Assembly: GCA_002104905.1 (NCBI GenBank)
Contig: MCFE01000317.1
Coordinates: 1 to 64,000, forward strand
Direction: 5' to 3'
Source: Basidiobolus meristosporus CBS 931.73
Taxonomy: Eukaryota > Fungi > Basidiobolomycota
DNA: 64,000 nt
Positions 8,541 to 57,500 of the stretch are shown here, in pieces. Position 1 is the stretch's first letter; each line of letters starts with the position of its first letter. Made by a program: the position numbers and the translations under genes. The notes beneath the pieces were generated by a model that did not search any database, was not told the origin of the DNA, and was given only the letters and a program-made list of their open reading frames with translations.

Positions 8541-9424
8541 GCAAAGCCAGCCATTGTTATTTTGCGATTTTTCACCCCGCCCAAGCCCAGTATGTGTAAT
8601 GCCGGTTGGAGTTCGGCTACCTTATTGGTGAATAAATACATTCATAAAAGAACCAGCCTCTTGTGAATTTTGATATCGTCTGAAGACAAGATGTGTGTAA
8701 CGACCATTATTATAGAAGTTCTTTTATCGGAGTGGATTATTGCCATGGCTTCGCTTACAAATCTGAAGTGAAACTAGATTGACCATTTTGAACTTAATCC
8801 AAGTTAATGTACTAATTATGAGGCATCTATAATGAGGGGAGGGGTGGTGTCTGTTTAGGAATGGGGTCTTCATTTTACCTGCAGCAGCAACTCCCTTTGA
8901 AATAGGAAAGTCTAGACGCGTACCACGTGCAAAAAAGCTAACTCTGTAAACAAAAGAAATTGGAAAACCCTTGGTGGCCACATCCACTCGAAATGACGGG
9001 TGGTTACCAACTGGCATTAGTAATCCTGTAGCCTAACCGTCCTTGCCAGCTGGCCAATCACATGAAAGGGAGATATGGATTTGTCAGCTATGATACAGTC
9101 TGGCCTTTTGTGAGTTGGCTAGGATATATGTGAATATTTCCTGGAAATCGGTATCCACAGTTTGCCATTATCAGCACTAGAAGTTTAAGATCAATTGAGA
9201 AGTCCGGATTAATAAAGCTAAATGTTTGGCGACTTTCAAAATCTCTTGATGGGAAAATATGGATCTTAACCCAATTCATCAAAAGCCACGAAAGGCGAGG
9301 ACAATGCACAGTTATTGGTTACGCGGTTACGTAGACGTTGAATCTTTCCTAGATGAGAAAATCGCAGTGGCCTTCTTGATAAGATTGATGTGGGGCCCTA
9401 AGCAGTTCATATTCAATGGCCAAA

Positions 9425-9519: not shown

Positions 9520-10629
9520 ATGGCTTTCCGTCTTATTTCTCGCGCAATCACCCCAGTTGGTAGAAGCCGTGTCGTCGGCGCTTCATTGCTCGGTGCCTCT
9601 CGCAGCTCTGTCGTCCGCTCGGCAACACGTGGATACCAAACTGGTCCTGTGAAGAAGAGTGGCTCTAGCCCCATGGTTTGGGCTTTGGCCTTTGCCGGTG
9701 CCGGTATTGCTGGATATTACATGATGACTCCTGCCGGCAAAGTTGAGCCCCACGCATCGCCCAAGGATAACGTTGGTGTGAACGTTGAGACCAAGAAGAA
9801 AAATTTGGACTACCAAGCCATCTACAACGAAATTGCTGATATCCTTGAAGACAACGATTACGACGACGGCTCCTTTGGACCAGTTTTGCTTCGTTTGGCC
9901 TGGCACGCATCTGGAACTTACAACAAAGCTGATGGAAGTGGTGGTTCCAACGGTGCCACTATGAGATTCAGACCTGAGTCCGAGCATGGTGGTAATGCTG
10001 GGTTGGGTGTTGCTCGTGACAAGCTGGAGGCCATCAAGCAAAAGTATCCCGACCTTAGTTACTCCGATTTGTGGTCATTGGCCGGTGTAGTAGCCATCCA
10101 AGAGATGGGCGGCCCTACCATCCCCTGGAGACCTGGACGTACTGACAAGCCTTCTGCCAACGACTGTACCCCTGATGGCAGATTGCCCGATGCTTCTCAA
10201 GGTGCCAGCCACGTCCGTGACATCTTCTATCGTATGGGTTTCTCCGACCAAGAGATTGTTGCTCTATCTGGAGCTCATGCCTTGGGCCGCTGTCACTCTA
10301 CTCGCTCAGGATTCGAAGGACCTTGGACTGCCTCACCCACTATGCTCACCAACGATTACTTCCGACTTCTACTTGAGGAGGAATGGGTACCCAAGAAGTG
10401 GGATGGACCATTCCAATATGTCGATAAGTCCACTGGTGAGTTGATGATGTTGCCTACTGATATGGCATTGGTCAAGGATCCTAAGTTCAAGAAGTACGCC
10501 GAACTTTATGCCAAGGATGTCGACAAATTCTTCGAGGACTTCGCCAAGGCCTACGTCAAGCTTGGCGAGCTAGGATGCAGATTCCCCGATTCCACTCCTA
10601 CCTACCGCTTCAAGTCCACCTTGGAGTAA
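9520..10629 (+). CDS. CCP1: Mitochondrial cytochrome c peroxidase (class I heme peroxidase)
   Basis: Intronless. Arg/Ser-rich presequence plus TM stop-transfer segment, distal [12 protein letters not shown] motif, proximal [27 protein letters not shown]. Confidence 0.96.
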
Positions 10630-40422: not shown

Positions 40423-41412
40423 TTACTCGATATCGGCAGCAAACTCGAGGAGCTCTGCCTCGCTGGTTGTATCCGTCCCTGAATCCAACAAGAATCGCCA
40501 AGGCCTTTGATGAACCTTTGGTTTGTATGAGCGTACTATCAAAAGTAGACTGTCTTGCGTCGCCCAAAAGACAGCATCCAATTTAACCCAAGTGAATGTT
40601 GGAGAAAATAGGTGAAGTACAGTTGTAGAGACGGCTACATCCTCTTGGACCTGTTTCATTTTCTCCACAAGAGTGGGAAGCTCATCAGGATGCAGGTATG
40701 TAGCTAGCTGAGATCCTGTAAGCTCAGTACTTGGAATACCCAACAAAAACTCTGCCGATGGGGATGCATATATGATTGCTGGACGCTCGCTACCTCGTTC
40801 AAGAACAAAGCACACACGTGGTTCGGGGTTGATGGGTATATTAGAGTTGCGTAATAGTCGCTGCTGTAAACCATTCAAAAGCATTTCATGGCTTTGCCTC
40901 CAATTCTGTTTGACACGGAAATCAGACGTAAATATCAAGCAAAATAGCATAATGTTCGACGTTTACCTTAGCTGAAACGTCTCCGTGCAAACTGAACTCA
41001 AACCACTCGTCAACTTTCTTGTGAGGCTCTTCAAAAACCCATTTAGAAATCGGCCAAAATACCAGTACAACCATAAAAGATACGTACTGATTTGATTCAC
41101 CGGTACGAATCTGATTACTCGCTTTGTATAGCAACAACATCCCATCGCATCAACATTCACCCAGGACCCATTCTTGTGCTTGATATGAAAGGTAAAGCCA
41201 GAAAGGAAGATGTCGCGAACTAACGTATACACAGAAAAAAGGTGCATAGAGGCTGCCTGATCAGGATGGCAATAGTCTAGGAATTTCTGGCCGACTAGCT
41301 CATCTGGGCGATATCCGAGCAGTTCAGTAACTCCGTTGGAGATGTATATAAAGCGTGGCTCCATATTTTGCTCAATGAAGGCAAAAAAATCCGGTACCTT
41401 TGCTGTGGCCAT
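40423..41412 (-). CDS. Stand-alone tandem-PAS protein (copy 2)
   Basis: MATAKV...FIYISNGVTELLGYRPDELVGQKFLDYCHP...HIKHKNGSWV; middle exon KPHKKVDEWFEFSLHGDVSAK; PAS2 EPRVCFVL...IYASPSAEFLLG...YLHPDE. Confidence 0.85.
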
Positions 41413-42026
41413 TGAGATATCGAAGGGGACTTTTTCGTTTGGAATACAATAGGAAATGAGGGGTGAAGGAACAACAAGGTTTGCTTGACCGAAAATGAGG
41501 ATGTTACAATAATACGAAATGTACAGGAGATATAGATAACTTAATAAACACTCAGAGATAGACCAAGACTTTAAGTGATAAGCATAGAGTGCAGTTTGCC
41601 AGGATGGGAAGTACAATATATACCTGAGTACGTTAGTTCCCAACAATATCTATCTGGAAAGTCCCATATGATAAAAGCAAGATCCTAAACTTTAATCAGC
41701 TCTATGCATGCTACAGCACTAGGAATTGTTCTGTGGAAACTTATTGGCTCTGTGTCATCCAACACTACTGGAGTACCCATATATCAGGTTCAATAATTAA
41801 ATCATTGTGAATTGCCCACGATGAACGAATAATTGTTAGATAATTGTCGTTGATTGATAGAGACCAACGGATTGTAGTGGTACAATAGCAACTATACAAT
41901 CGTTCCATATCTCTGGTCTATGTTGAGTTGTTGCAATAGAACAATTTTAGTTATTGCGAGGGAATCTTTATATGATGCATTGGTTGTGGGGTAAACAGCT
42001 ACGTTCTAGTGCGTACAATAAACCTT

Positions 42027-43004: not shown

Positions 43005-44063
43005 ATGCCTGACCTCTCAAAATTAAACAGTAAATATGGTGACTATGTTGAATGCTTAGTTGGTGTGTATTCCTTTGTTTGCTGAGTAGGATTCCCTTTG
43101 TAACATTCCTACTTTATAGATGCGGTCGAATATACCATTGAGAATATTTGGTATGCTGAAACGTCCTTGTCACGCACCAAGAGGCTGCTATTGAGAGCCT
43201 TTGTTCGTGAAACTATCAAAAGTTCCCGTGTGTTTTACTCTACGGTGATGATTTCTTTACTCTATCTTTATCGTATCAAACGGTTGATTGGTTTGGATTC
43301 GTCGCTCGTAATCTCACAGATTCTTGATAGTCGCCACTTACCAAAGCTTCTCTTTGACATTGATTATTTCAGCGAAGACCTCTCTACACCTCTATTTATC
43401 AGCAGCGGCCAGCCTACAGACGCCTCATTCTCATGCAACTCCGAAGCTCGTTACAATAGCGCCCGTTCCTTCTTTATCGGTGCTATTATCGCTGCCTCGA
43501 AGTTTCATCAGGAGCGTTCCCCCACAAACTATGAGTGGGCACGTTTTTCGAAGATGAGCGTGCACGAAGTAGGTCTGACCGAGGTCACCTTTTTACAATG
43601 TTTAAATTATCAACTGTTTGTTCCTGTCCACGAATATGAGTTGTGGTCTGAGCAGTTGATGCGTGAAGTTCGTACCTATAAGGTCAATTCAAGTCTTCCA
43701 GTAAGAGAGCGATCCATTGGCTATACCAAGCTCCATTCAAGCCGGAGCGTTGTCTCAGCCAATCTTTCAAGTTCCTTACCTGTACGGTGCCCCTATCCCT
43801 CACAGGTTTCCAGCCCATCCCTTTCGGATAAACGAGTGTCTCGGCGATTTAAACAACCGCTCAGAGGTGCCCATTTACTTTACAGCTGTAATCAGCGTTC
43901 ACAAGAGAAGCTTGAGACGTTGTCGGATCATGGTACACCACTGCCTCGGGATTACGACCCAAAAGTCCTTTATACATCGAGAACTCCGGAGTGTTACAAT
44001 CGATCACTTCGCCTGCACTCGTATCGCACTCAGCTCATCCATGATTTATCCGCCTCATATTAA
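43005..44063 (+). CDS. Pho80/Pcl-family cyclin (Pcl5/Clg1-like)
   Basis: Short first exon from ATG 43005 splices in frame (..CLV|DAVEYTIENIW). Cyclin box FVRETIKSSRVFYSTVMISLLYLYRI...FIGAIIAASKFHQERSPTNYEWARFS...EVTFLQCLNYQLFV. Confidence 0.88.
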
Positions 44064-44953: not shown

Positions 44954-47900
44954 ATGCGGAAGGATTCGGTTTCCGAAGGCCCATCATTTTCAACGACACC
45001 AAGCATACTGAGCAACCGGATTCCACATAGCGCGGAGACACTTCTATCGAAACGCAACAAGCCTGAAGGTTTATATTATTTGGTGAAATGGCAGAATTGC
45101 CCAACTGAGAAATCGACCTGGGAACATGAATCGCAGTTGCCGCATTATTTCTCTTCCTTGAGCCAAGTTCAAGAAGAGGAGAACCTTTTGAACAAATCTC
45201 CATTCTTGTATACATTCGACAAGATCGAGACTGCTTGTAATCTAACCCTTGAACAAAAAGTCTTTGCCTCTCTTGAAATGCAGATTGGCTTGCTTACAAG
45301 AACCACGCGATATTATCAAGAGCTCTTTGAAAAACTAATTTCCCCCAATGTCTCTACACAGGTCAAAGATAGCGTGTTATTGTTCTGCCTCGATTTATTC
45401 GAACCGAACGATGCTGATGACTCCTTTCTTGGCTTTGAGAGTGCCCCCTCAGCTATTGCTCCATCCTACATCGAAAAGGTGACATCGGAAGATGAGAGTA
45501 CAACGGCCGCAGAATCTGGCAATTCTGAATCAGATTCCCTATTTTCTTCTTCACAGCACGACATCGAAGAAAGATCCTTGTTTGAGACTAGTACTCGTCG
45601 AAAAATTCGAAGACTACATAAAAATTCCAATATTCAACAGGACGATTCGGTGAAAGCATTGAGAGTTCTTGCTCGAAGTAAGACTAAAGGTGGAAAAGTA
45701 AAATTTCAATTGTACTGGAGTAATGGCACAACATCTTGGGTAGGTTAGGAGTGAATTTCATGAACTCGGAGTCTATTCTATCAATTGATGTTGGTATTTA
45801 CGTGTGTGTTGTTGCAGGTACCTATCTCGAAACTTGATCAGTTCATGCATCTGGTTGAAGAATATGAACATTTGGAGTTCAGTAAATACGATATGAGGTC
45901 ACCTAAATCCACCAGAAGAAGGAGAACCTCACAACACAAGCAACGCTCTAATCATCGGCATAGAGCAGACCCAAGTGTAGGCACCTTCAGCGACATTATT
46001 GCTGAATCGGATTGGTCTGAAGTGGAAACAGGAATATTGGATGCTAACTTTAAGCTATATCGTTCAAGCTGTAACTATTATTTGTATATACCATTGAATG
46101 ATATTCGACACTAAAGGCTAATAATTCGAATATAGGTACCAATAATGCTAACCGGCTTACTCGAAGTCCAGAAGACAAAGAACGTTTATCGCACTCTCGC
46201 AAATCACCCTTACCTATAGTAAATCAGTTGTCAGATATGCGACATACCAATCGTACAAAAGCCTCCATAAACTATTCTGATATGGGTTATTCTACTACTG
46301 ACGAGAGTAGCTCGGATCTGGAGCCACCTATTTCCAGTGGACATGTTCAACCACGCAATGTACATAACAAGGAATACATTATTTCTAATACGTCTCTAAA
46401 GACCCCTAATTCTTCGCCTATTGCACCGAAATACCCACAACGTACTTCTCTACCACCTGAGCAAGAGCATGATGATCCTTGTATTTTGCAAGGAAAACCA
46501 AAATCCCAGACATACGAGAAGCCGTTCAAGCGCACTATAAATGCTCAGGGTAGTGCGCTTAAAAGTAGAAATTCCGGCACTACTGATGAAGAATTGCAAA
46601 TATCCTCGAATTCTATAAATCCACACACAGAAAATATGCCAAAAGCCACCTTTTACGCACAGAGCCACGATGCCGATACGAGGAAAGAAAGCACTATGAG
46701 CAACGAACAAGCACCTCCTGAAGCCAAGAGAGGTACAAAGACGTCTATCCAGACTTTGCCTAAACACTTCCAAATACGCCTACCGAGCACAAAAATTTCA
46801 CAGCACAGCTGTTGGAGAGAGGTGATGTGAACGAAGCTGATATCGCTCACATGCAGCATTATGAAAAGGAGGACATAGAGCTTAAACGTTGCTATATATG
46901 TGGAGATAATGGCGCTATTGGTGACATCTCGAATTTTCCGGATATAGATACCGTGCTAGATGATACACTTCTATCGTGTGATAGATGTTCGTTTATTGCC
47001 CACAAAAAATGCATTTGCTCAGCACTTGGAACTATCACACTTGAAAATGGAATTTGCCAGCGAGTGCTGCTGCATAGCGATAGCAGTGATGTGGAATCAG
47101 AATTGGCAAGCACCAGTACGATCACCGTATGGCACTGTGACAACTGTATAAAATGGCCCAACGATATTGAGAGGATATTAACTTATCGTAAAAGCCAGGG
47201 TATCACAGAGTTTCAAGAGAGCCCAAAGAAGAAAACGAAAGCCACCAACAACCTTGGTTCTGAGACGGTTAGAGAGTACTTGGTGAAATTCAAAGGCTTA
47301 TCCTACCATCAACTCGCGTGGGTTCCCTCGAGGTGGCTTCGTCATATTGCCCCTATTCGCTATCGGAATTTTGAGAGGAAAGATATCGAGCCTCAAACGG
47401 TAGCCGACGTTGTTAAAGACCAGTGGTATTATGTAGATGAAATCCTAGACGCCCAATTATGCAAACCTGTAGTTGCTGCCTCTCCACAGGATGTATTAAG
47501 AATATACGCCAAATGGAAAGATCTACCTTACGAAGAGTCTACTTGGGATGATCCGCCAAAACCAGAATCCGTGTTTTACACCGCTTATGTCCAAGCTTTC
47601 AATCGGTACCTAGAATCGATGAAAATGGAAGCGTACACTTCAACGGATGTCAAATCGCTGAGTTTTAAGGAGTTGCATTCCCAGCCGCCATTTATAAATA
47701 ATGGAAAGCTAATGAAACATCAACTTGACGGTTTGAATTGGCTTCTTTATAAATGGAAGAACCGTTGTTCTTGTATCCTAGCTGATGATATGGGCCTGGG
47801 GAAAACAATTCAAATCATATCATTTTTATCTGTACTTTATAATGCTCATGCTGTCCGTAATTTCCTGTTGGTGGTTCCGAACTCTGTAACCTCCAACTGG

Positions 47901-50900
47901 TTGAAAGAGCTTCTGAAATGGGCTCCGAATCTGATCGTTACCCCGTACTATGGAACAAACACGAACCGCGATGTACTGCGTCGACACAAACTGTTCAAAA
48001 ACAATGACGACAGGCCTGCTCAACTTAAGTGCCACGCAGTAGTAACTACCTACGAATCTATGATATCCGATGCAGACATCCTTTCCCGTATAGTACCATG
48101 GGAAGTGCTTGTTGTAGATGAAGGCCATCGACTGAAAAATGAAAGCAGCCGTTTATTCGTTCAACTGAATAAGTTGACTGTCAGACACAAAATATTGTTA
48201 ACTGGAACACCTCTGCAGAACGATATGAATGAGCTTTTTAACCTGATGAGTTTCGTTGATCCGAAGATATTCGCTCAAAAAGAAAAAATGGCAGTTGAAT
48301 ACCAGAAGTTGACTAAGGCGCGAGTCGAGGAATTGCACAGCATGCTAAAGCCATACTTCTTAAGGAGAACTAAAGAAGAAGTACTACAGTCCTTGCCTAA
48401 GAAGATTGAAGTTATCGTCCCAATAGGCATGAGTGCCGTACAGAAGGAGCTGTACAAGGGAATCTTAAGCCAAAACCACGATCTGCTCAAATCTATTCTT
48501 GGTGTTGGGAAAGCCTCAGGCCCAATTCGTAAAACAACTCTTGTGAACACTCTGGTAGAGCTCCGAAAATGCCTCAATCATCCGTACTTGTTGGATGGAG
48601 TTGAAGAAACGGATGAATCTGCTGAGCTTGTTCAAGAAAGACTGGTCGCTGCCTCCGCGAAACTATCTCTTCTCCATCTGCTATTACCACGGCTTAAACA
48701 AGAGGGTCACAGAGTTCTTATATTCTCACAAATGACTCGAATGTTAGATATACTCGAAGACTATTTAACCTACGAAGGTTACAAATACTGTAGGCTTGAC
48801 GGTGGTACTCCAAACGACTTGAGACAACAGCTTGTAGATGCTTACAATGAGCCTAATTCCGACCTTTTCATATTTCTACTTTCCACTCGAGCTGGTGGAG
48901 TTGGATTAAATCTGGCTACTGCTGATACCGTTATTATTTATGACCCCGATTTCAATCCGCACGCCGATCTACAAGCTCTGAGTCGAGCGCATCGTATCGG
49001 ACAGGAGAAGCGAGTGCTTGTTCTTAAACTTGTAACACGAAACTCTGCTGAGGAGCGCATTCTACAAGTCGGAAAGAAGAAATTGGTCATGGATCACCTG
49101 GTAATTGAGCGAATGGATAATAAAGATATGAAAAACTCGGAGGTCGACAGCATCCTAAGGTTTGGTGCAAAGGCTCTTTTTGCCGAGGATGTTGAGCCTG
49201 CCCAGACTACCATCAAGTACGACGAGAGCGCTATCACATCACTTCTGTCAAGAGTCGCAGAAGGTCCCGAAGCTGATCAAATCAGCATGGAGTCCGGTTC
49301 AAATGGATTCGGGTTTGCAAAAATCTGGTCCGGAGACGCCGCCGTTTTACAAGAAAATGACGAAGACTACTGGATACGAATCCTCCACAATAGGCTAGCC
49401 AAAACTGAGAAAAAGGAAGCCCCTCAATATGGCCGCGGCTCAAGGAAAAGAGTAAAGGTATGTACTTGTTCGGTCATTAACTGACGTTGCGATCTAAGAA
49501 TTTGAACTATGTAGACAACTCGGGTACCTGATATGGCCATCGATACAGGTGAAGACTCTTCTTCGTATATGGACGACGATGAGGAATCGAATACCTTGGA
49601 TACTGAATATCCTGGAATAGCGGACAAATCCAAGCTTCAAAGTAAGCAAAGAATGAAACCAAAAAGTGCAAGAAAAGTATTTAGCCCAGTATCAAAGCCG
49701 CCTTCTCTGGCACCAATATCAAGTGTTGGAGCGCAATCTGCTCGTACTGTAGTAGAAACTGCTTTGCTGAAAACCGACACAAATTTACAAACGTCGAGGC
49801 CTGAAGTTGGAATCATCGATCCTCGATCCAGGCCAAATTCACAACTGCCTGGAACAAATATACCTCTCGACACACCTATCCGTTCCAATGCGGTTAGAAC
49901 GCCTTCAACTTTCAACGCGATGACCCCTCGATATCTATCGTTCAATCCAACTCCTGCAAACCAGCCATTACTTAGTCGTGAAGAGATATTCCTGCATTTG
50001 ACTTCGATTGGGGCTTACGATCCTTACACTAAACAATCTCTTGTAACCCCTTTCGTAATGCCCAACGGTGAGATCAAATATTTTGCACATGGTGCTGGCT
50101 ATATGAACATGCAGCAAATGTTGATGTATGTTCGCCAAGTCAAGAATCGACTTCTTGGCCATGCTCGCACACCTCTCCCAAGTATTCAATCTCATGCGAT
50201 ATCCAATAGTGTTGGAAATGTCAGCGTGAACCATAACGTGTACAACAGGGGTAATTCCCAACCAGCCACATATTCACGCACTGGTGCAGACTCATACCGT
50301 GGCGTAAATTCAACCACAAACCAGGCCTTGGACTTTCGCTTGAACTCGGCCTCACATACGAATCTACCGTCTACCTCCAATATGCCTCTAGCTCTAAGCA
50401 GCCACCGAAGTCAACATGTTGACTCGCAAACCTATCGAGGTTCAACTTCAAACTCGGGCTATCCTTCTGTGGCTACCCCTACACAGCGAATCACAGGAAA
50501 ACAGACTGTCTGTATGCTATGCTTTCTCCCTAACCATACGGATACAACGTGTCCATATCGTCAAGATCTTGCTTGGCTTACTCGCCAATTCTCCGTAATC
50601 ATAAATATCAAGCCAGCTGAGCTCCCTCGGAAGACCCTGGTTCTGAATCTTCTGAAGTATTATATATCCTTGGAAAGGCAGAAACAACTTCAAGGAACGA
50701 ATCAGTCTGAATTGTCAGTTTGTGGATCAGCCAACCAATGTGGGCAAGCACAATCGTCCAGACGCAGCACAGTCTCTGTAGGTTATCTCGATCAAAGCGC
50801 CAAGACATCGACACAAGCTCCCCCACGACTTCATTCGAATACTGTCGTGTTAGATGATGATAGTCAACCCATAGGAATATATGCTCAGCTGGAATGCAAA

Positions 50901-51416
50901 ATAACGAGCCCCTCGAATGAAGAGACAGTCGATCATCCAGTGTCTACCGCCACAACTTCGAGTCAACCGGACATCAAAAATAGACGAGGATCAGGTGTAG
51001 CGGCAAAAGTTCAACCACAAACCACCTCTTCTGAACCGAATCTCGGTCCAAGAGATGCATCACAACCGCTTGTAGCGTTAGATGATAAGATTGATTCGAA
51101 CTCCGAGTCACAACCGACTATCGTATGTGAACAGCAAAAGTATCCAGAGTACGTCGACACTGCATCTACTTCAGAACATCAGGCCAATCCACCCACCCTT
51201 CCAGATAAACGAATAGAGCCACCCTTGTCACCAAGCAACTCATCGGTATCTATACCTTCATCACATCGTTCGCTCTCACCTGATAGCAATCTTGGTGTCA
51301 ATCCTCCACTGAAAAGGTCACTACAATCCGGAGTCTGTAAGTCACCGAAAAAAAGAGGAATCATCATTCCGATCCCGACCAACCGACCCCGAAAAGGGAC
51401 TCCCTTCAATCTATAA
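44954..51416 (+). CDS. Mit1/CHD (Mi-2-like) SNF2 chromatin remodeller with extra N-terminal chromo modules
   Basis: Exons 44954..45739, 45818..46070, 46136..46732, 46804..49457 and 49515..51416 total 6192 nt in one frame, with phase-compatible GT-AG introns. Domains: chromodomain, second chromo-fold segment, PHD (CYIC...CDRC..AHKKC...WHCDNC), two CHD chromodomains, ATPase (ILADDMGLGKT, DEGH, LTGTPLQN, LRKCLNHPYL, RVLIFSQM, LLSTRAGGVGLNL, QALSRAHRIGQ) and a CCHC knuckle. Confidence 0.9.
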
Positions 51417-51628: not shown

Positions 51629-53353
51629 CTAGTCTTTGTTTGGCTTTGCGTCCATGGAGACCCTAGAGAGTCTACGGGTACGCATTTTGCCTGTTCTGTC
51701 TTCGAATGCATGCAGCTCGTGTCTGGCCTCCGCGGTTTCGGAGTCTGATAGCTTTTCTTTTATCTCATCTTCGGAAGTCAACTCCTCCAGCTTGATATTG
51801 TTACCAAGATTAGAGTTTACAGTCATGGTGGAAGACCCCGAAGCTGCCCCGGGAGTCATGATGACGGCTGGCTCGTCAAGTACATCGAGGTGGCTCTTTT
51901 CGAAGAGCTTGGGTAAGACAAATTGCTTGACTGGTACCAGTAACAATATGAAGACTGGGAACGAGATGGCGGCAGGGGATTCGGTGATGTAAAAGATCAA
52001 GGCGAGCAGTAACACTTGAACGATGGTAAACTTGGCCACAACCTTGTAGGGAACACTCACTGTCGCCCACAGCGGAGGGGTTAGCTTCTTATCAGTAAAT
52101 ATCAGCTTGACTCGGTTGGCAAGAGTATTGTCAACAAAGGACTCTAGGCCCATATACAGGAAAAGCCCAGCAAGAACAGCACGTGGGATCAACCCAAGAA
52201 CATGCAATATGGGCGGAAGAAGAGTGAGGCCAATTAAGAGGGATTGGAAGAGACCAGACACGCGCTGCTCACAGACGTGGTCCACAAACTCAATTCCTTT
52301 GTCTTCGCTGCGCTTAATTTTGGATAGGGAGCGAACGTGAAGAGGCGCCTGTGGAATCAACCCATTTGGAGCTGGGATGCCAAGTATTCCAGAGATTAGG
52401 GTGCATATACCCAACATGAGAAAGTCGAAGTGGAACGCTGGCCCTTTGCGAAGGTGGAACTCCGGTCTTTGGGATAGAAGAGAGGATACATTGTGATCGA
52501 AGAAGAAGAGAACGGTCAACACGATGGCGGGAAGGATGGACGCAAATACCGCCCACAATGGAAGCTCCCAGAAAGGCACCAACCAAGGTCGACCAGTCGT
52601 TGTCTGGAATGTATCTGGAACAGGAAGACGTGCGATCTCCAAGTTGGTGAGCTTTGGAAGATACGGAAGGGCGGTGAAAAGAACAATGGCAAAAGCGGCG
52701 GCGTAGTCGGCAATGATCCCCCGAATACCTTTCTTGAACAACGTCCACTTTCTGGCGCTTGCCAGATTGGTGGCAACGTAGAAAGTCCCAAGAGCCAACA
52801 ACAGAGATAACAGGGCCTGGGCCATGGGACCGCCAGTGAAGTAGCTGACAATTTCCTGGACGGCTTTGACCACATAAATAACTGCTATCAAACAGCCGAA
52901 TATCTCGCAGCTAAACTTGGTAATGTACTTCAGGAAGTTGCAACTATTGCAAATAGCCAGAATGACATGAAACAAGGTGGCCCAAATGCTTGCCCAGGCC
53001 ATAAATGGTAGAAACGCCACGTCCAACTGCTTACAGATATCAAAAACGGTCGCAGAGAAAATGGACACCGGGCCGGTAACGCCCATTATCACCAGCGGTT
53101 GTCCGGCAAAGATTGCAAATATTACGCCGCCCATGGCAGTTGAAAGAATTACCTCCACCACGCCATAGTTATTTTCTGTACTTTTGGATAGATCTGCTGC
53201 GAAGGTGATTGAAGGCAAAATGCTACAGAAGAACATAAATATTATTGACGCCAGAACCTTCGTCTGTAGGCCCTCTCTCCAGTCCGACCAATACAAGGGA
53301 AGCCTTCTCTTCAAATCACCCCGAATCCCCTCAAACAGATTGATTTTGTACAT
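51629..53353 (-). CDS. BOR1: Boron/bicarbonate transporter, SLC4 family
   Basis: Intronless. GIRGDLKRRLPLYWSDW, AGQPLVIMGVTGP, FSCEIFG, LFFFDHNVSS, GLIPQAPLH, EQRVSG, LFLYMG. Confidence 0.95.
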   Translation of the reverse strand: MYKINLFEGIRGDLKRRLPLYWSDWREGLQTKVLASIIFMFFCSILPSITFAADLSKSTENNYGVVEVILSTAMGGVIFAIFAGQPLVIMGVTGPVSIFSATVFDICKQLDVAFLPFMAWASIWATLFHVILAICNSCNFLKYITKFSCEIFGCLIAVIYVVKAVQEIVSYFTGGPMAQALLSLLLALGTFYVATNLASARKWTLFKKGIRGIIADYAAAFAIVLFTALPYLPKLTNLEIARLPVPDTFQTTTGRPWLVPFWELPLWAVFASILPAIVLTVLFFFDHNVSSLLSQRPEFHLRKGPAFHFDFLMLGICTLISGILGIPAPNGLIPQAPLHVRSLSKIKRSEDKGIEFVDHVCEQRVSGLFQSLLIGLTLLPPILHVLGLIPRAVLAGLFLYMGLESFVDNTLANRVKLIFTDKKLTPPLWATVSVPYKVVAKFTIVQVLLLALIFYITESPAAISFPVFILLLVPVKQFVLPKLFEKSHLDVLDEPAVIMTPGAASGSSTMTVNSNLGNNIKLEELTSEDEIKEKLSDSETAEARHELHAFEDRTGKMRTRRLSRVSMDAKPNKD

Positions 53354-54584: not shown

Positions 54585-57500
54585 ATGGAAGGGAGACTAG
54601 TAAGAAACTACATAGTGAATCTTGGGGAGACCTCAGGAGAGGCTTCTTCTGTTCTGAAGGAGATCATCGAAGGTGCAATATTCCTGTGAATGGTTCTGCC
54701 TAGAGCTATGATGTCTAAACCATATTAATACACAGGCATCGATCTCGGCCAAACGACACTGTTAAATCTTGTCCAGGCCTTAGAGGAATTTTTGACCAAC
54801 GATGACAACTCTTTAAGAGCTAAAGGTGTGTATGCAGCCCGGAACTTTCCTCGATGCGCCGCCTAATTTGATTTCAACCGTGCAACCCAGGAACAAACCT
54901 TCTCTCCACTGTTTTGGCCGCTTGCTCGAAGGAACAAGTAAACAGTAAAGCTGGTACTTAGGAATGTCAAAACACCTTATCGACGTTCACTCCTAATAGA
55001 AACCCTCTAGTCTCGGTTTTGCTAGGCTTCTATAGCGATAGATTGACCGATGCCAGTTGTCTTCACGAGCTGCTTAAAGGCTTGTTGGCATTGCAAAGGT
55101 TTAAGTGGTTTGGTTCCAGTGCCTCCGTCAAAAGCGCTGAAAGGTATGCGGTCTCTGTTTCTAGGTGGCATCGCAACAATAGTTTGACACAGTTGATAGC
55201 ATCTTTGCTTCAGTCGACATGAATACTTTAACCCAAGCAACACGCCACGTCGTTTTCCAAATTCTTTACGGATTGCTGGAGAATCATATCACTAGTACTG
55301 TATAGATGCGTCCATATCTTGAACCGCAAAAGGTCGAAAACTTACGGCGCTTGATATAGGCATCAAAACTATGAAGGAGCAGTTTGTCACTGGGTACTTG
55401 AATATTATGGACGGAGAAAAAGATCCACGGAACCTGATATTGGCATTCAAATCAGTCAAAATAATTATTGACAACTTCGATATCACCAACCAGGTCGAGG
55501 TGGGGGATCGGTGTTGCGTCAATCGCGGATGCTCTAGTGTAGCTAACATCATCCCATTATGTAGAGTCTCTTTGAAGTCACCTTCTGTTACTTCCCAATC
55601 ACCTTCAAGCCACCTCCAGGTGACCCATACGGCATCACTGCAAGCGATTTGAAGTTAGCTTTGAGGTTAGCATCTCGGTCGACAGTTCTGTCGATATGTA
55701 ACACCCACTAATGACCCTGTTTAGACAATGTTTGGCTGCAACACCTCTTTTCGCCAAACACAGTATGCCCCTTTTGTTGGATAAGTTGATGTCCACCTCT
55801 GGAAATGCTCAGGTTGGGAACATGTGCAACATAAAGTTTAACGACCATGGTATTCATGCTGGCGTTTGTAGTTGGATTCTCTGGAAACGCTCGCTCAGTG
55901 TATTCCTGTTTATGGTGCGGAAAGCATAGAATCTCATGTGTTGGAGCTGCGTGCGGCTTTGGAGGACGAGGTAAGGGCTCTCTTGATCCGGTGCCATTTG
56001 GACGAAAGTCTCAATGAGACTGTCTTTTTTAGCTTCTTGAGCTCCCACCTGTAGAGATGGAGAATATCGTTATGAGCGTGATCATCGTACTTGTCAGAAC
56101 TCTGGCCAACAGCGAGCAGACTGATAAGCAGGTCTTGATGGAGTTCATCAATCAGAACATCCAGGATTCGATGGATGCGTTTAATGAGGCCGTCGTTCCT
56201 AAACCCAGAGCGGTTGGAAAACTTCTTAGAGCAACCGCAAGTGGTTCCAGTCAGTATTCTGCTTGCCATTTGCGCACTGCCCAATTGGACTAATCTTTTT
56301 ATTCGCACCATGATAGCCCTGTCGAACCGCAAGGTCGTTGAAAGTATCGTGCCCTTTTTGACCGACTTGTACGGTCGCATAGAATTCACTGCCAAAAAGA
56401 ACATCATTCTCGAAACCTTGCTGGATCTGATCGAAGCCAACAGAGAGCTCTACAGCATTGGTGACTCTCAGTCCAATCCTGCCGGCGAATCTACCCCGTT
56501 GATTGCTTTCAAGGATAAGCTTTTTGAGATATATTCAAGTGCGCTCAAGTCATCGAACGAACATAACGAATTAAGGTCCGTTGGTCTACGTGGGCTTTGT
56601 GCTATGGTTCTAGTGGACCAGCTTCTTTCTGATAATGAGGCTGGAGTTGCTGTTCAGCACATTGACTCTGCCCTCTTCGACGAGATTAGTCAATCTATTA
56701 GCCAAGAGGCACTCGATTCTCTAAATTCTATTGCCCCGTTGCGCCCTTATGTTATTCGCAACATCACTTTGCACGATGTACTATCGGTATTGCCAGATAC
56801 CAACGTGGAGGTTTCTTTGGGACAAAGAAAGAAAATTGAAAAAAGTCTCAAGTATATCGAAAGCATTTGCATCGAGCCTGTGCTGTTCGAGGCTGCTACA
56901 TCCAGCCTATTGCAATACTTTGAGAAATACACCGCCGAAGCTAGGAGCGATGGCACACTCCCGTTCTTAGTCCTCTCCACCATTCGTGCAATTCTGAAGA
57001 CCAAATACTCCAAGGGGCATTCGGATATATCCTTGGTTCTGAACTCCTTGGTTACTCACCTGTATTCCATTGCTATTTCGAATGCGATCGAGAATCACCA
57101 AAGTCTTCTGGCCGACACGAACATCTTGACGGAGATCGCCAAGATCTCCAACCTCGTCTTCCGTAGCTTGGACGCACAGGAGCAAACTTTGTTCATCGAG
57201 AAAGTTTTCGAAGTGTTTTACAAAGGAAACACCAATTCCGTTGTTTTCAACATTGCTACACTGGGCGCCACCGAATTTTACCCTCTCAAGCCCTCTTCTT
57301 CCCTTGCTCAGACCAACCTCTCAATTCTTTTCACATCGATTCTCTGTTGCTTACGAAAGGAGGTAAGACGTAACACACTACTGGTTGACGGCAAGCGTTT
57401 AATACGGGAATCCCTCTGATTAGGTTGCAATCCCTGTTGCAGATGTATCCGGATTCCTCTCAGAATTGCTGGAGTCTGCAATGAGCAGTGATAATCTGTT

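What the first reader, a model, noticed from the sequence alone, without database searches (positions are those of the whole stretch)
44954..51416. HP1-like module apparently fused in frame to a Mit1/CHD remodeller
Seen in sequence: four ORFs join through canonical introns (45740..45817 phase 0; 46071..46135 phase 1 with a GCTAAT branch point; 46733..46803 phase 1; 49458..49514 phase 0) into one 2063-aa protein. Its first ~300 aa read as a chromodomain (YYLVKWQN...STWEHESQL), an acidic Ser/Glu hinge, then a second chromo-fold or chromoshadow-like segment (KVKFQLYWSNGTTSW|VPISKLDQFMHLVEEYE). This is the HP1 layout, placed upstream of the usual PHD-chromo-chromo-SNF2 core. Established: in S. pombe the HP1 protein Chp2 recruits the SHREC remodeller Mit1 as a separate polypeptide. 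Inference: this may be a Rosetta-stone fusion that hard-wires chromatin targeting to remodelling in an early-diverging fungus.
Basis: partly seen in the sequence, partly recalled or inferred. Interest (0 to 1): 0.8.

Follow-up and report, generated by a model that had tools for sequence, protein, structure and literature searches.

The report
Mit1 remodeller with extra N-terminal chromodomain
This is one real five-exon gene of the fungus Basidiobolus meristosporus for a Mit1/CHD3-type chromatin remodeller; its "second chromo fold" is the ordinary Mit1 N-terminal domain, and only the first, HP1-class chromodomain is an unusual, Basidiobolus-specific addition, whose methyl-lysine cage is degenerate in this copy.

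Summary
The five exons join through GT-AG introns into a 2063-aa ORF. That ORF aligns end to end (53% identity) with an annotated 2191-aa Basidiobolus ranarum protein, with no indel at any of the four junctions. The window is B. meristosporus contig MCFE01000317.1, where the public annotation calls only a 621-aa fragment.

- Residues 26-70 are a genuine chromodomain (Pfam Chromo, E 4.7e-10). In the paralogue and in B. ranarum it is HP1-class with a full aromatic cage. In this copy the cage reads His25/Trp46/Cys49.
- The second chromo-like segment (residues 227-292, spanning intron 1) is not a chromoshadow domain. It is the conserved N-terminal chromodomain-like (CDL) domain of fungal Mit1 (Pfam DUF7141). 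In S. pombe this is the domain that docks onto the Chp2 chromoshadow dimer.
- Between the two lie a conserved three-helix module and an acidic linker.

So this is not an HP1 cassette fused to Mit1. It is a Mit1 that gained one extra HP1-type chromodomain. I saw that addition only in the four Basidiobolus genes (two paralogues in each of two species), and I found no literature on it. No RNA runs were listed. The scan had not noted this before.

The parts
44954..51416 (+). Complete CDS (5 exons, 2063 aa) of the type-1 Mit1/CHD3 paralogue of Basidiobolus meristosporus.
   Evidence: Translation has no internal stop. Aligns end to end with B. ranarum P0176. Contig identified.
45029..45163 (+). CD1: N-terminal chromodomain, residues 26-70. 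Cage positions are H25, W46 and C49.
   Evidence: Pfam PF00385 E 4.7e-10. AF2 pLDDT above 90 and matches to chromodomains: Oxpecker Z 8.8, then Rhino, SUV39H1, Chp1 and HP1. Cage positions read from alignment A2 and the CBX5 alignment.
45206..45409 (+). Conserved three-helix module, residues 85-152.
   Evidence: AF2 helices at 99-113, 118-129 and 135-149 with pLDDT 75-95. 60% identity to P0176 against 30% in the flanking linker. Only generic three-helix-bundle matches.
45410..45631 (+). Acidic, Ser-rich disordered linker, residues 153-226.
   Evidence: Sequence. pLDDT about 50. 30% identity to the orthologue.
45632..45907 (+). CDL: the Mit1 chromodomain-like N-terminal domain (DUF7141 family), residues 227-292, interrupted by intron 1.
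   Evidence: phmmer hit to Gamsiella Mit1 N-terminus at E 3.5e-10. HMM without Basidiobolus rows at E 8e-12. hhalign against Ascomycota DUF7141 at 96.5%. A1 profile hits 6fto_C. Fold of the orthologous segment is chromo-like.
45740..45817 (+). Intron 1 (78 nt, phase 0), inside the CDL.
   Evidence: GTAGGT...TTGCAG. Same position and phase in the B. meristosporus paralogue and in B. ranarum P0176.
46071..46135 (+). Intron 2 (65 nt, phase 1).
   Evidence: GTAACT...ATATAG with CTAAT. Same position in the B. ranarum gene, and the junction is collinear.
46733..46803 (+). Intron 3 (71 nt, phase 1), in the poorly conserved linker.
   Evidence: GTACAA...TCACAG. It is needed to pass from the frame of ORF 46228-46830 to that of ORF 46812-49484. 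It has no counterpart in B. ranarum, so its exact boundaries are the least certain.
46887..47147 (+). Cys-rich, PHD-like zinc-finger region.
   Evidence: Only weak Pfam hits: PHD_4 E 0.011. The Cys pattern is conserved with the paralogue and with B. ranarum.
47247..47615 (+). Tandem chromodomains (Chromo plus Chromo_MIT1).
   Evidence: PF00385 E 7.4e-08 and PF23615 E 2.2e-14.
47718..49001 (+). SNF2 ATPase (SNF2-rel_dom plus Helicase_C).
   Evidence: PF00176 E 1.9e-73 and PF00271 E 3.8e-26. Best PDB match is CHD4 at E 7e-137. 82% identity to P0176.
49458..49514 (+). Intron 4 (57 nt, phase 0).
   Evidence: GTATGT...ATGTAG. Same position in B. ranarum. The public 621-aa gene model reads through it into a stop.
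50511..50552 (+). CCHC zinc knuckle (C-x2-C-x4-H-x4-C), residues 1763-1776.
   Evidence: Sequence, and conservation in P0176. Not detected by Pfam or by an Ascomycota zf-CCCH_6 profile.
51342..51398 (+). Conserved C-terminal motif SPKKRG-IIPIPTNRPR.
   Evidence: Nearly identical in B. ranarum P0176.

Best explanation
The locus is one gene: the type-1 paralogue of the fungal CHD3/Mi-2-type nucleosome remodeller Mit1 in Basidiobolus meristosporus.

Domain order:
1. HP1-class chromodomain (CD1)
2. three-helix module
3. acidic linker
4. Mit1 chromodomain-like domain (CDL, Pfam DUF7141)
5. long disordered linker
6. PHD-like fingers
7. tandem chromodomains
8. SNF2 ATPase
9. long C-terminal region with a CCHC knuckle

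Shown here: the gene model, the domain identities, the orthology, and that I found CD1 only in Basidiobolus Mit1 genes.

Inferred: the protein works as in S. pombe. The ATPase slides or positions nucleosomes in silent chromatin. The CDL serves as the docking surface for an HP1 chromoshadow dimer. CD1 was added before the two paralogues duplicated, as a reader domain in cis that can touch methylated histone tails directly.

In this copy the cage is H25/W46/C49. The domain is still well conserved (69% identity to B. ranarum). CD1 here has therefore probably lost or changed methyl-lysine binding and acts as a protein- or nucleic-acid-binding chromo fold. Heterochromatin targeting would then still depend on the CDL and the PHD/chromo core.
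For: Gene model:
- Clean 2063-aa ORF.
- End-to-end collinear alignment with P0176, including all four junctions.
- Three of the four introns are positionally conserved, and intron 1 is also conserved in the paralogue.
- CD1 and the first half of the CDL share one uninterrupted exon.
- Domains are 59-69% identical against about 30% for the linkers.
- Conserved microsynteny with the HCO3 transporter gene.

Mit1 identity: Chromo_MIT1, SNF2 and Helicase_C hits; nearest relatives are fungal Mit1 proteins.

CDL identity; fold. The role of the CDL in S. pombe is taken from PMC6499331 and PMC11833287.

CD1. HP1 class and a full cage in relatives.

Distribution: only the four Basidiobolus genes among about 220 Mit1 N-termini show two N-terminal chromo-like domains. 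The N-terminal Pfam Chromo hit is absent in the Mortierellomycotina, Mucorales, Geosiphon and Coprinopsis proteins scanned. No other long protein has this module.
Against: - There is no transcript evidence.
- The B. ranarum protein is itself a prediction.
- Intron 3 is not conserved.
- The link to the S. pombe CDL rests on a marginal profile hit (E 0.018) plus position and a transitive profile match. An Ascomycota-only DUF7141 HMM does not hit this protein directly.
- No binding, dimerisation or silencing function was tested.
- The Ascomycota Mit1 C-terminal zinc finger (PF18585) was not detected.
- Loss of methyl-lysine binding is inferred from only two substituted cage positions.
Confidence: 0.78

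Rival explanations
1. One reading: a whole HP1 cassette (chromodomain, hinge, chromoshadow-like dimerising domain) was fused in frame to Mit1, a Rosetta-stone fusion of Chp2 with Mit1.
For: CD1 is HP1-class in relatives. An acidic linker follows it. The second domain has a chromo fold, and chromoshadow structures also appear among its structural matches, at lower rank. Three of the 32 CDL family members give weak Chromo_shadow hits, best E 0.018. The HP1-Mit1 interaction is established (PMC6499331).
Against: The second domain is homologous to the N-terminal domain of Mit1 proteins that lack CD1 and to the S. pombe Mit1 CDL chain. The best sequence and structure matches are chromodomains, not chromoshadow domains. 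The orthologous segment gives Chromo at E 0.0037 and no Chromo_shadow hit. The model has the single long C-terminal helix typical of chromodomains.
Confidence: 0.08
2. Two genes: a small chromodomain protein (exons 1-2, ending at the TAA at 46112-46114) and a separate Mit1 gene starting downstream.
For: Read-through of intron 2 meets a stop at 46114. No RNA data are available. The public annotation has no gene model over this part.
Against: The CDL encoded by exons 1-2 is the N-terminal domain of Mit1 in every other fungal lineage examined, including the experimentally studied S. pombe protein. The exon 2/3 junction is collinear, and the intron position is conserved in B. ranarum. The same order is reconstructable in the paralogue locus. 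There is no conserved internal start codon.
Confidence: 0.05
3. CD1 of this copy is still a working methyl-lysine reader, so this protein reads H3K9me or H3K27me directly and bypasses HP1.
For: The fold is intact and the domain conserved: 69% identity to B. ranarum, invariant W46 and W56-E57. A His can contribute to some reader pockets (own knowledge).
Against: Two of the three cage positions are non-aromatic (H25, C49), whereas the paralogue and both B. ranarum proteins keep F or Y/W/Y. Retention of the CDL suggests that HP1 docking is kept.
Confidence: 0.2

Closest known systems
S. pombe Mit1 (SHREC remodeller; CHD3/Mi-2 subfamily)
   Same: N-terminal chromodomain-like domain, PHD-type fingers, Chromo_MIT1 chromodomain and a SNF2 ATPase, in the same order. 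A Zn-binding motif lies in the C-terminal region.
   Different: It has an extra HP1-class chromodomain and a three-helix module upstream of the CDL. No recognisable CkIvV-type HP1-binding motif was found. The linkers are much longer (2063 aa). The PF18585 zinc finger was not detected.
Basidiobolus ranarum K7432_003206 (P0176, 2191 aa) and K7432_012605 (P0175, 1588 aa), both annotated as 'hypothetical protein'
   Same: Same full architecture, including CD1 and CDL. P0176 is the orthologue (53% identity, shared introns and synteny). P0175 is the orthologue of the second B. meristosporus paralogue.
   Different: Both keep an aromatic cage (Y/W/Y) in CD1, whereas this copy has H/W/C. P0176 lacks intron 3.
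HP1 family (Swi6, Chp2, CBX1/3/5)
   Same: CD1 belongs to the same chromodomain class, and an acidic stretch follows it.
   Different: There is no chromoshadow domain. The second chromo fold is the Mit1 CDL. The cage is incomplete in this copy. The module is part of a 2063-aa ATPase.
Metazoan CHD3/4/5 (Mi-2)
   Same: The PHD, tandem chromodomain and SNF2 core; best solved-structure match is CHD4 (E 7e-137).
   Different: The metazoan proteins have no N-terminal CD1/CDL pair (from my own knowledge of their architecture, not tested here). The CHD4 C-terminal domains (DUF1087 and others) were not found here.

Membership tests
Fungal Mit1 / CHD3-type remodeller | SNF2-family ATPase with Helicase_C | tested here: met
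   PF00176 E 1.9e-73 and PF00271 E 3.8e-26. CHD4 and Chd1 are the top PDB hits.
Fungal Mit1 / CHD3-type remodeller | Mit1-type chromodomain before the ATPase (PF23615) | tested here: met
   E 2.2e-14, 54 bits against a cut-off of 27.
Fungal Mit1 / CHD3-type remodeller | PHD-type zinc fingers upstream of the chromodomains | tested here: inconclusive
   Only sub-threshold hits: PHD_4 E 0.011, PHD E 0.89. The Cys-rich region is conserved with the paralogue and with B. ranarum.
Fungal Mit1 / CHD3-type remodeller | N-terminal chromodomain-like domain (CDL / DUF7141) | tested here: met
   Mucoromycota-only HMM at E 8e-12. hhalign against Ascomycota DUF7141 at 96.5%. Profile hit to 6fto_C at E 0.018.
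Fungal Mit1 / CHD3-type remodeller | C-terminal Mit1 zinc finger (PF18585) | tested here: not met
   No Pfam hit in exon 5, and an Ascomycota-derived profile does not hit. A CCHC knuckle is present instead. The Mucoromycota proteins checked by name in that search also gave no hit, and none of the early-diverging fungal Mit1 with a name carries PF18585 in the precomputed Pfam lists, so this feature may define only the Ascomycota subgroup.
Fungal Mit1 / CHD3-type remodeller | HP1-binding CkIvV/PxVxL-type motif upstream of the CDL, and membership of a SHREC-like complex | not testable with these tools
   No conserved motif was seen by eye in the alignment. Complex partners lie outside the window.
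HP1 family | N-terminal chromodomain with a three-residue aromatic cage | tested here: not met
   The fold and the Pfam hit are met, but the cage is H25/W46/C49 against F or Y/W/Y in relatives.
HP1 family | C-terminal chromoshadow domain (PF01393) that dimerises | tested here: not met
   No PF01393 hit for the exon pieces or for the orthologous full segment. The domain is homologous to the Mit1 CDL. Dimerisation itself could not be tested.

The most novel reading that the evidence does not exclude
In the Basidiobolus lineage the SHREC-type remodeller Mit1 acquired its own HP1-class H3K9me-reading chromodomain, placed next to the CDL where S. pombe Mit1 carries its HP1-binding motif. This is a natural reader-remodeller fusion that partly or wholly bypasses the HP1 adaptor.
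Probability: 0.3. Interest if true: 0.5.

Novelty: new variant of a known kind. Interest (0 to 1): 0.35.

Why it matters
In fission yeast, how the Mit1 remodeller finds heterochromatin depends on a dedicated HP1 adaptor (Chp2).

A lineage in which Mit1 carries an HP1-type reader domain in cis is a natural experiment on that dependency.

The work has three further uses:
- It corrects the public gene models of both B. meristosporus Mit1 loci, which are annotated as 621-aa and 881-aa fragments.
- It identifies Pfam DUF7141 as the Mit1 chromodomain-like domain across fungal phyla.
- It flags a conserved three-helix module of unknown role.

The finding is modest in scope: one added domain, in one genus, untested, and degenerate in this copy.

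Tried and rejected
- RNA evidence: the look-up of sequencing runs listed no run.
- Exhaustive HMMER search with exon 1: only 33 generic chromodomain hits, and none of Mit1 length. One hit (P0131) seemed to share the FLY-FDK motif. Its locus L003 carries only a stand-alone chromodomain with no CDL or Mit1 downstream, so it was rejected as irrelevant.
- Search for long proteins with the P0176 N-terminal module: only P0176 itself.
- Gamsiella locus L001: no CD1 was found upstream of its Mit1. An assembly gap lies there, so absence is not proven for that species. Other Mortierellomycotina full-length proteins also lack it.
- phmmer of the Gamsiella and Pneumocystis N-termini against PDB found nothing useful. 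Only the family profile reached 6fto_C.
- Three-helix module: the ESM Atlas feature search scored at chance level, 0.80. VIA-align gave only generic or designed three-helix bundles.
- Ascomycota zf-CCCH_6 profile against the C-terminus: no hit.
- I did not type the spliced CDL sequence into Pfam or AlphaFold. The orthologous B. ranarum segment and in-script HMMs on the spliced model were used instead.
- The pseudogene reading was rejected: the ORF is intact and the ATPase is 82% identical to the orthologue.
Full report
**Observation**

They join into a 6192-nt reading frame of 2063 codons plus a stop. The four introns are GT...AG, of 78, 65, 71 and 57 nt. Intron 2 carries CTAAT upstream of its acceptor, and reading through it meets the TAA at 46112-46114.

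Pfam on the exon pieces gives Chromo PF00385 at residues 28-67 (E 4.7e-10, above the curated cut-off). In exon 4 it gives weak PHD-type hits, Chromo, Chromo_MIT1 (PF23615, E 2.2e-14), SNF2-rel_dom (E 1.9e-73) and Helicase_C. The best solved relative of the core is CHD4, followed by Chd1.

**Organism and public annotation**

A 621-aa protein identical to part of exon 4 (P0001) is encoded on contig MCFE01000317.1 of assembly GCA_002104905.1, Basidiobolus meristosporus CBS 931.73. Window and record coordinates coincide.

The public model covers only residues 818-1430 and runs through intron 4 into a stop. CD1, the CDL, the PHD-like fingers, the chromodomains and all of exon 5 are unannotated.

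**Is it one gene?**

No RNA run was listed, so the case rests on comparison.

- A length-unrestricted route (querying with the Gamsiella Mit1 core) found two full-length Basidiobolus ranarum proteins: P0176 (2191 aa) and P0175 (1588 aa).
- Both start with a strong Pfam chromodomain, at residues 26-68 and 22-71, and continue into Chromo_MIT1.
- The 2063-aa model aligns with P0176 from the first Met to the C-terminal motif SPKKRG-IIPIPTNRPR at 53% identity. All four exon junctions fall in collinear, indel-free alignment.
- In the B. ranarum gene, introns sit at the same places as introns 1, 2 and 4. Intron 3, in a poorly conserved linker, has no counterpart.
- The next gene, a 574-aa HCO3-transporter gene on the minus strand, is 85% identical and in the same position in both species.
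- Identity is 69% (CD1), 60% (three-helix module), 59% (CDL) and 82% (ATPase), against 20-33% in the linkers. That is the pattern of a translated multi-domain protein.
- CD1 and the first half of the second chromo fold lie in one uninterrupted exon.
- The second B. meristosporus paralogue is annotated as the N-truncated 881-aa P0002. It has the same order upstream of its annotated start: a canonical chromodomain (Pfam E 8e-17), the second domain split by a phase-0 intron at exactly the same place, and a linker joining in frame to the PHD exon through GT-AG introns.

I therefore take the single-gene model as confirmed short of transcript data.

**What the second chromo fold is**

Residues 226-291, which span intron 1, match the extreme N-terminus (residues 26-92) of Gamsiella Mit1 by plain phmmer (E 3.5e-10 in a 120-sequence set).

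An iterative search over the N-terminal 450 residues of about 220 Mit1 proteins finds the same domain in three groups:
- at the N-terminus of all Mortierellomycotina Mit1 proteins in the set whose N-terminus is intact;
- in Mucorales Mit1;
- in many Ascomycota Mit1, where it coincides with Pfam DUF7141 (PF23614).

Further tests:
- An HMM built only from the Mortierellomycotina and Mucorales rows hits the spliced model at residues 234-291 with E 8e-12. The best of 2000 shuffles scores 6.9 bits.
- An Ascomycota-only HMM does not hit directly. However, the profile-profile comparison of the early-diverging set against the Ascomycota DUF7141 set gives 96.5% probability and E 8e-10.
- Of the 32 rows of alignment A1, 21 hit DUF7141.
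- The A1 profile hits solved chromodomains (cpSRP43, CDY1, MPP8; E 1e-5 to 1e-4). It also hits chain C of 6FTO, the N-terminal domain of S. pombe Mit1, at residues 25-72 (E 0.018).
- An AlphaFold model of the B. ranarum orthologous segment (pLDDT 78) has three strands and one long helix. Its best Foldseek matches are chromodomains (Oxpecker, Rhino, MPP8, Chp1; TM about 0.8), with chromoshadow domains lower in the list.
- The orthologous segment gives Pfam Chromo at E 0.0037 and no Chromo_shadow hit.

Leopold et al. 2019 (PMC6499331) showed that S. pombe Mit1 has an N-terminal 'CD-like' (CDL) domain. It lacks an aromatic cage and, together with a CkIvV motif and a linker, docks on the Chp2 chromoshadow dimer.

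The second chromo fold here is that domain. It belongs to Mit1 and was not imported with an HP1 cassette. It is routine in fungal Mit1.

**What is unusual**

Only CD1 and what follows it are unusual.

- Among the Mit1 N-termini scanned, two N-terminal chromo-like domains occur only in the four Basidiobolus genes.
- Pfam finds no N-terminal chromodomain in the Mortierellomycotina, Mucorales, Geosiphon or Coprinopsis Mit1 proteins scanned.
- An exhaustive HMMER search with exon 1 and a word-indexed search with the P0176 N-terminus found no other long protein with this module.
- The paralogue-type CD1 (B. ranarum P0175) best matches human HP1alpha (E 2e-12), then CDYL2 and HP1beta.
- The cage positions are Y/W/Y in both B. 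ranarum proteins and F/W/Y in the B. meristosporus paralogue. They are H25/W46/C49 in this gene.
- The fold is nevertheless predicted with pLDDT above 90 and matches chromodomains (Z 8.8 to Oxpecker).
- The stretch between CD1 and the CDL is not a plain hinge. Residues 85-152 form a confidently predicted, conserved three-helix module with only generic structural matches. Residues 153-226 are the acidic, Ser-rich disordered stretch.

**Mechanism**

Shown: the architecture, the orthology and the domain identities.

Inferred from the S. pombe work: the ATPase remodels nucleosomes in silent chromatin, and the CDL is the surface for an HP1 chromoshadow dimer. CD1 was gained before the paralogue duplication, because both types in both species carry it. 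It gives the remodeller a reader-type domain in cis.

For this copy I infer weakened or altered ligand binding from the two non-aromatic cage positions. The high conservation of the rest of CD1 and of the three-helix module argues that they are still used.

The Rosetta-stone idea survives only in a reduced form. An HP1-class chromodomain, not an HP1 protein, is fused to the partner of HP1.

**Novelty**

The same architecture sits in public databases as two uncharacterised B. ranarum proteins. I found no paper mentioning it.

It is a lineage-restricted variant of a known remodeller. It is of moderate interest to heterochromatin specialists. Its main practical value is in correcting two truncated gene models and in equating DUF7141 with the Mit1 CDL.

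**Limits**

- There are no transcript data.
- The orthologue is a predicted protein.
- The spliced CDL of this window could not be passed by reference to Pfam or AlphaFold. It was tested through in-script HMMs and through its orthologue.
- Other Zoopagomycota genomes were not surveyed at the DNA level.

Noticed in passing
window 47619-49484 (public model P0001) and L002 8653-10000: Both Mit1 paralogue loci of B. meristosporus are truncated in the public annotation. Here only 621 aa are called, and the model reads through intron 4. At the paralogue, the 881-aa P0002 lacks the CD1, CDL and linker exons, which can be joined through GT-AG introns 9038-9087, 9264-9333 and 9566-9623.
   Followed up: yes
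alignment A1; Ascomycota Mit1 N-termini such as P0021:101-157: Pfam DUF7141 (PF23614) appears to be the Mit1 chromodomain-like (CDL) domain described structurally in S. pombe. It extends to Mucoromycota and Basidiobolus (hhalign 96.5%; profile hit to 6fto_C at E 0.018).
   Followed up: yes
window 45206-45409: A conserved three-helix module lies between CD1 and the acidic linker. It is 60% identical to B. ranarum P0176, partly present in P0175, and absent from the B. meristosporus paralogue. It has no specific structural or sequence relatives.
   Followed up: partly
window 50511-50552 and 51342-51398: A CCHC zinc knuckle (C-x2-C-x4-H-x4-C) and a C-terminal SPKKRG-IIPIPTNRPR motif are conserved with B. 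ranarum. The Ascomycota Mit1 C-terminal zinc-finger family PF18585 is not detected.
   Followed up: partly
window 51629-53353 (-), 56175-57419 (+); L004 and L005: Microsynteny with B. ranarum. A 574-aa HCO3-transporter gene (85% identical) and a Tmemb_14 gene follow the Mit1 gene on the minus strand in both species. In B. meristosporus an MMS19-like gene comes next; the B. ranarum locus fetched ends before that point.
   Followed up: partly
window 46733-46803: Intron 3 has no counterpart in the B. ranarum orthologue, whose exon runs uninterrupted and carries about 20 extra residues there. This is either an intron gain or loss, or slightly different true splice sites.
   Followed up: partly
window 40423-41646 (-): Two adjacent minus-strand ORFs have PAS-fold hits (PAS_3 E 1.8e-09). 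They are probably exons of one PAS-domain gene.
   Followed up: no
window 43167-44063 (+): The upstream neighbour has a sub-threshold cyclin (PF08613) hit. It corresponds to an annotated 333-aa gene with no Pfam hit on record.
   Followed up: no
L003 2875-3407: A stand-alone 117-aa chromodomain protein (assembly GCA_015529795.1) resembles CD1 and the residues just after it, but no CDL or Mit1 lies downstream.
   Followed up: yes
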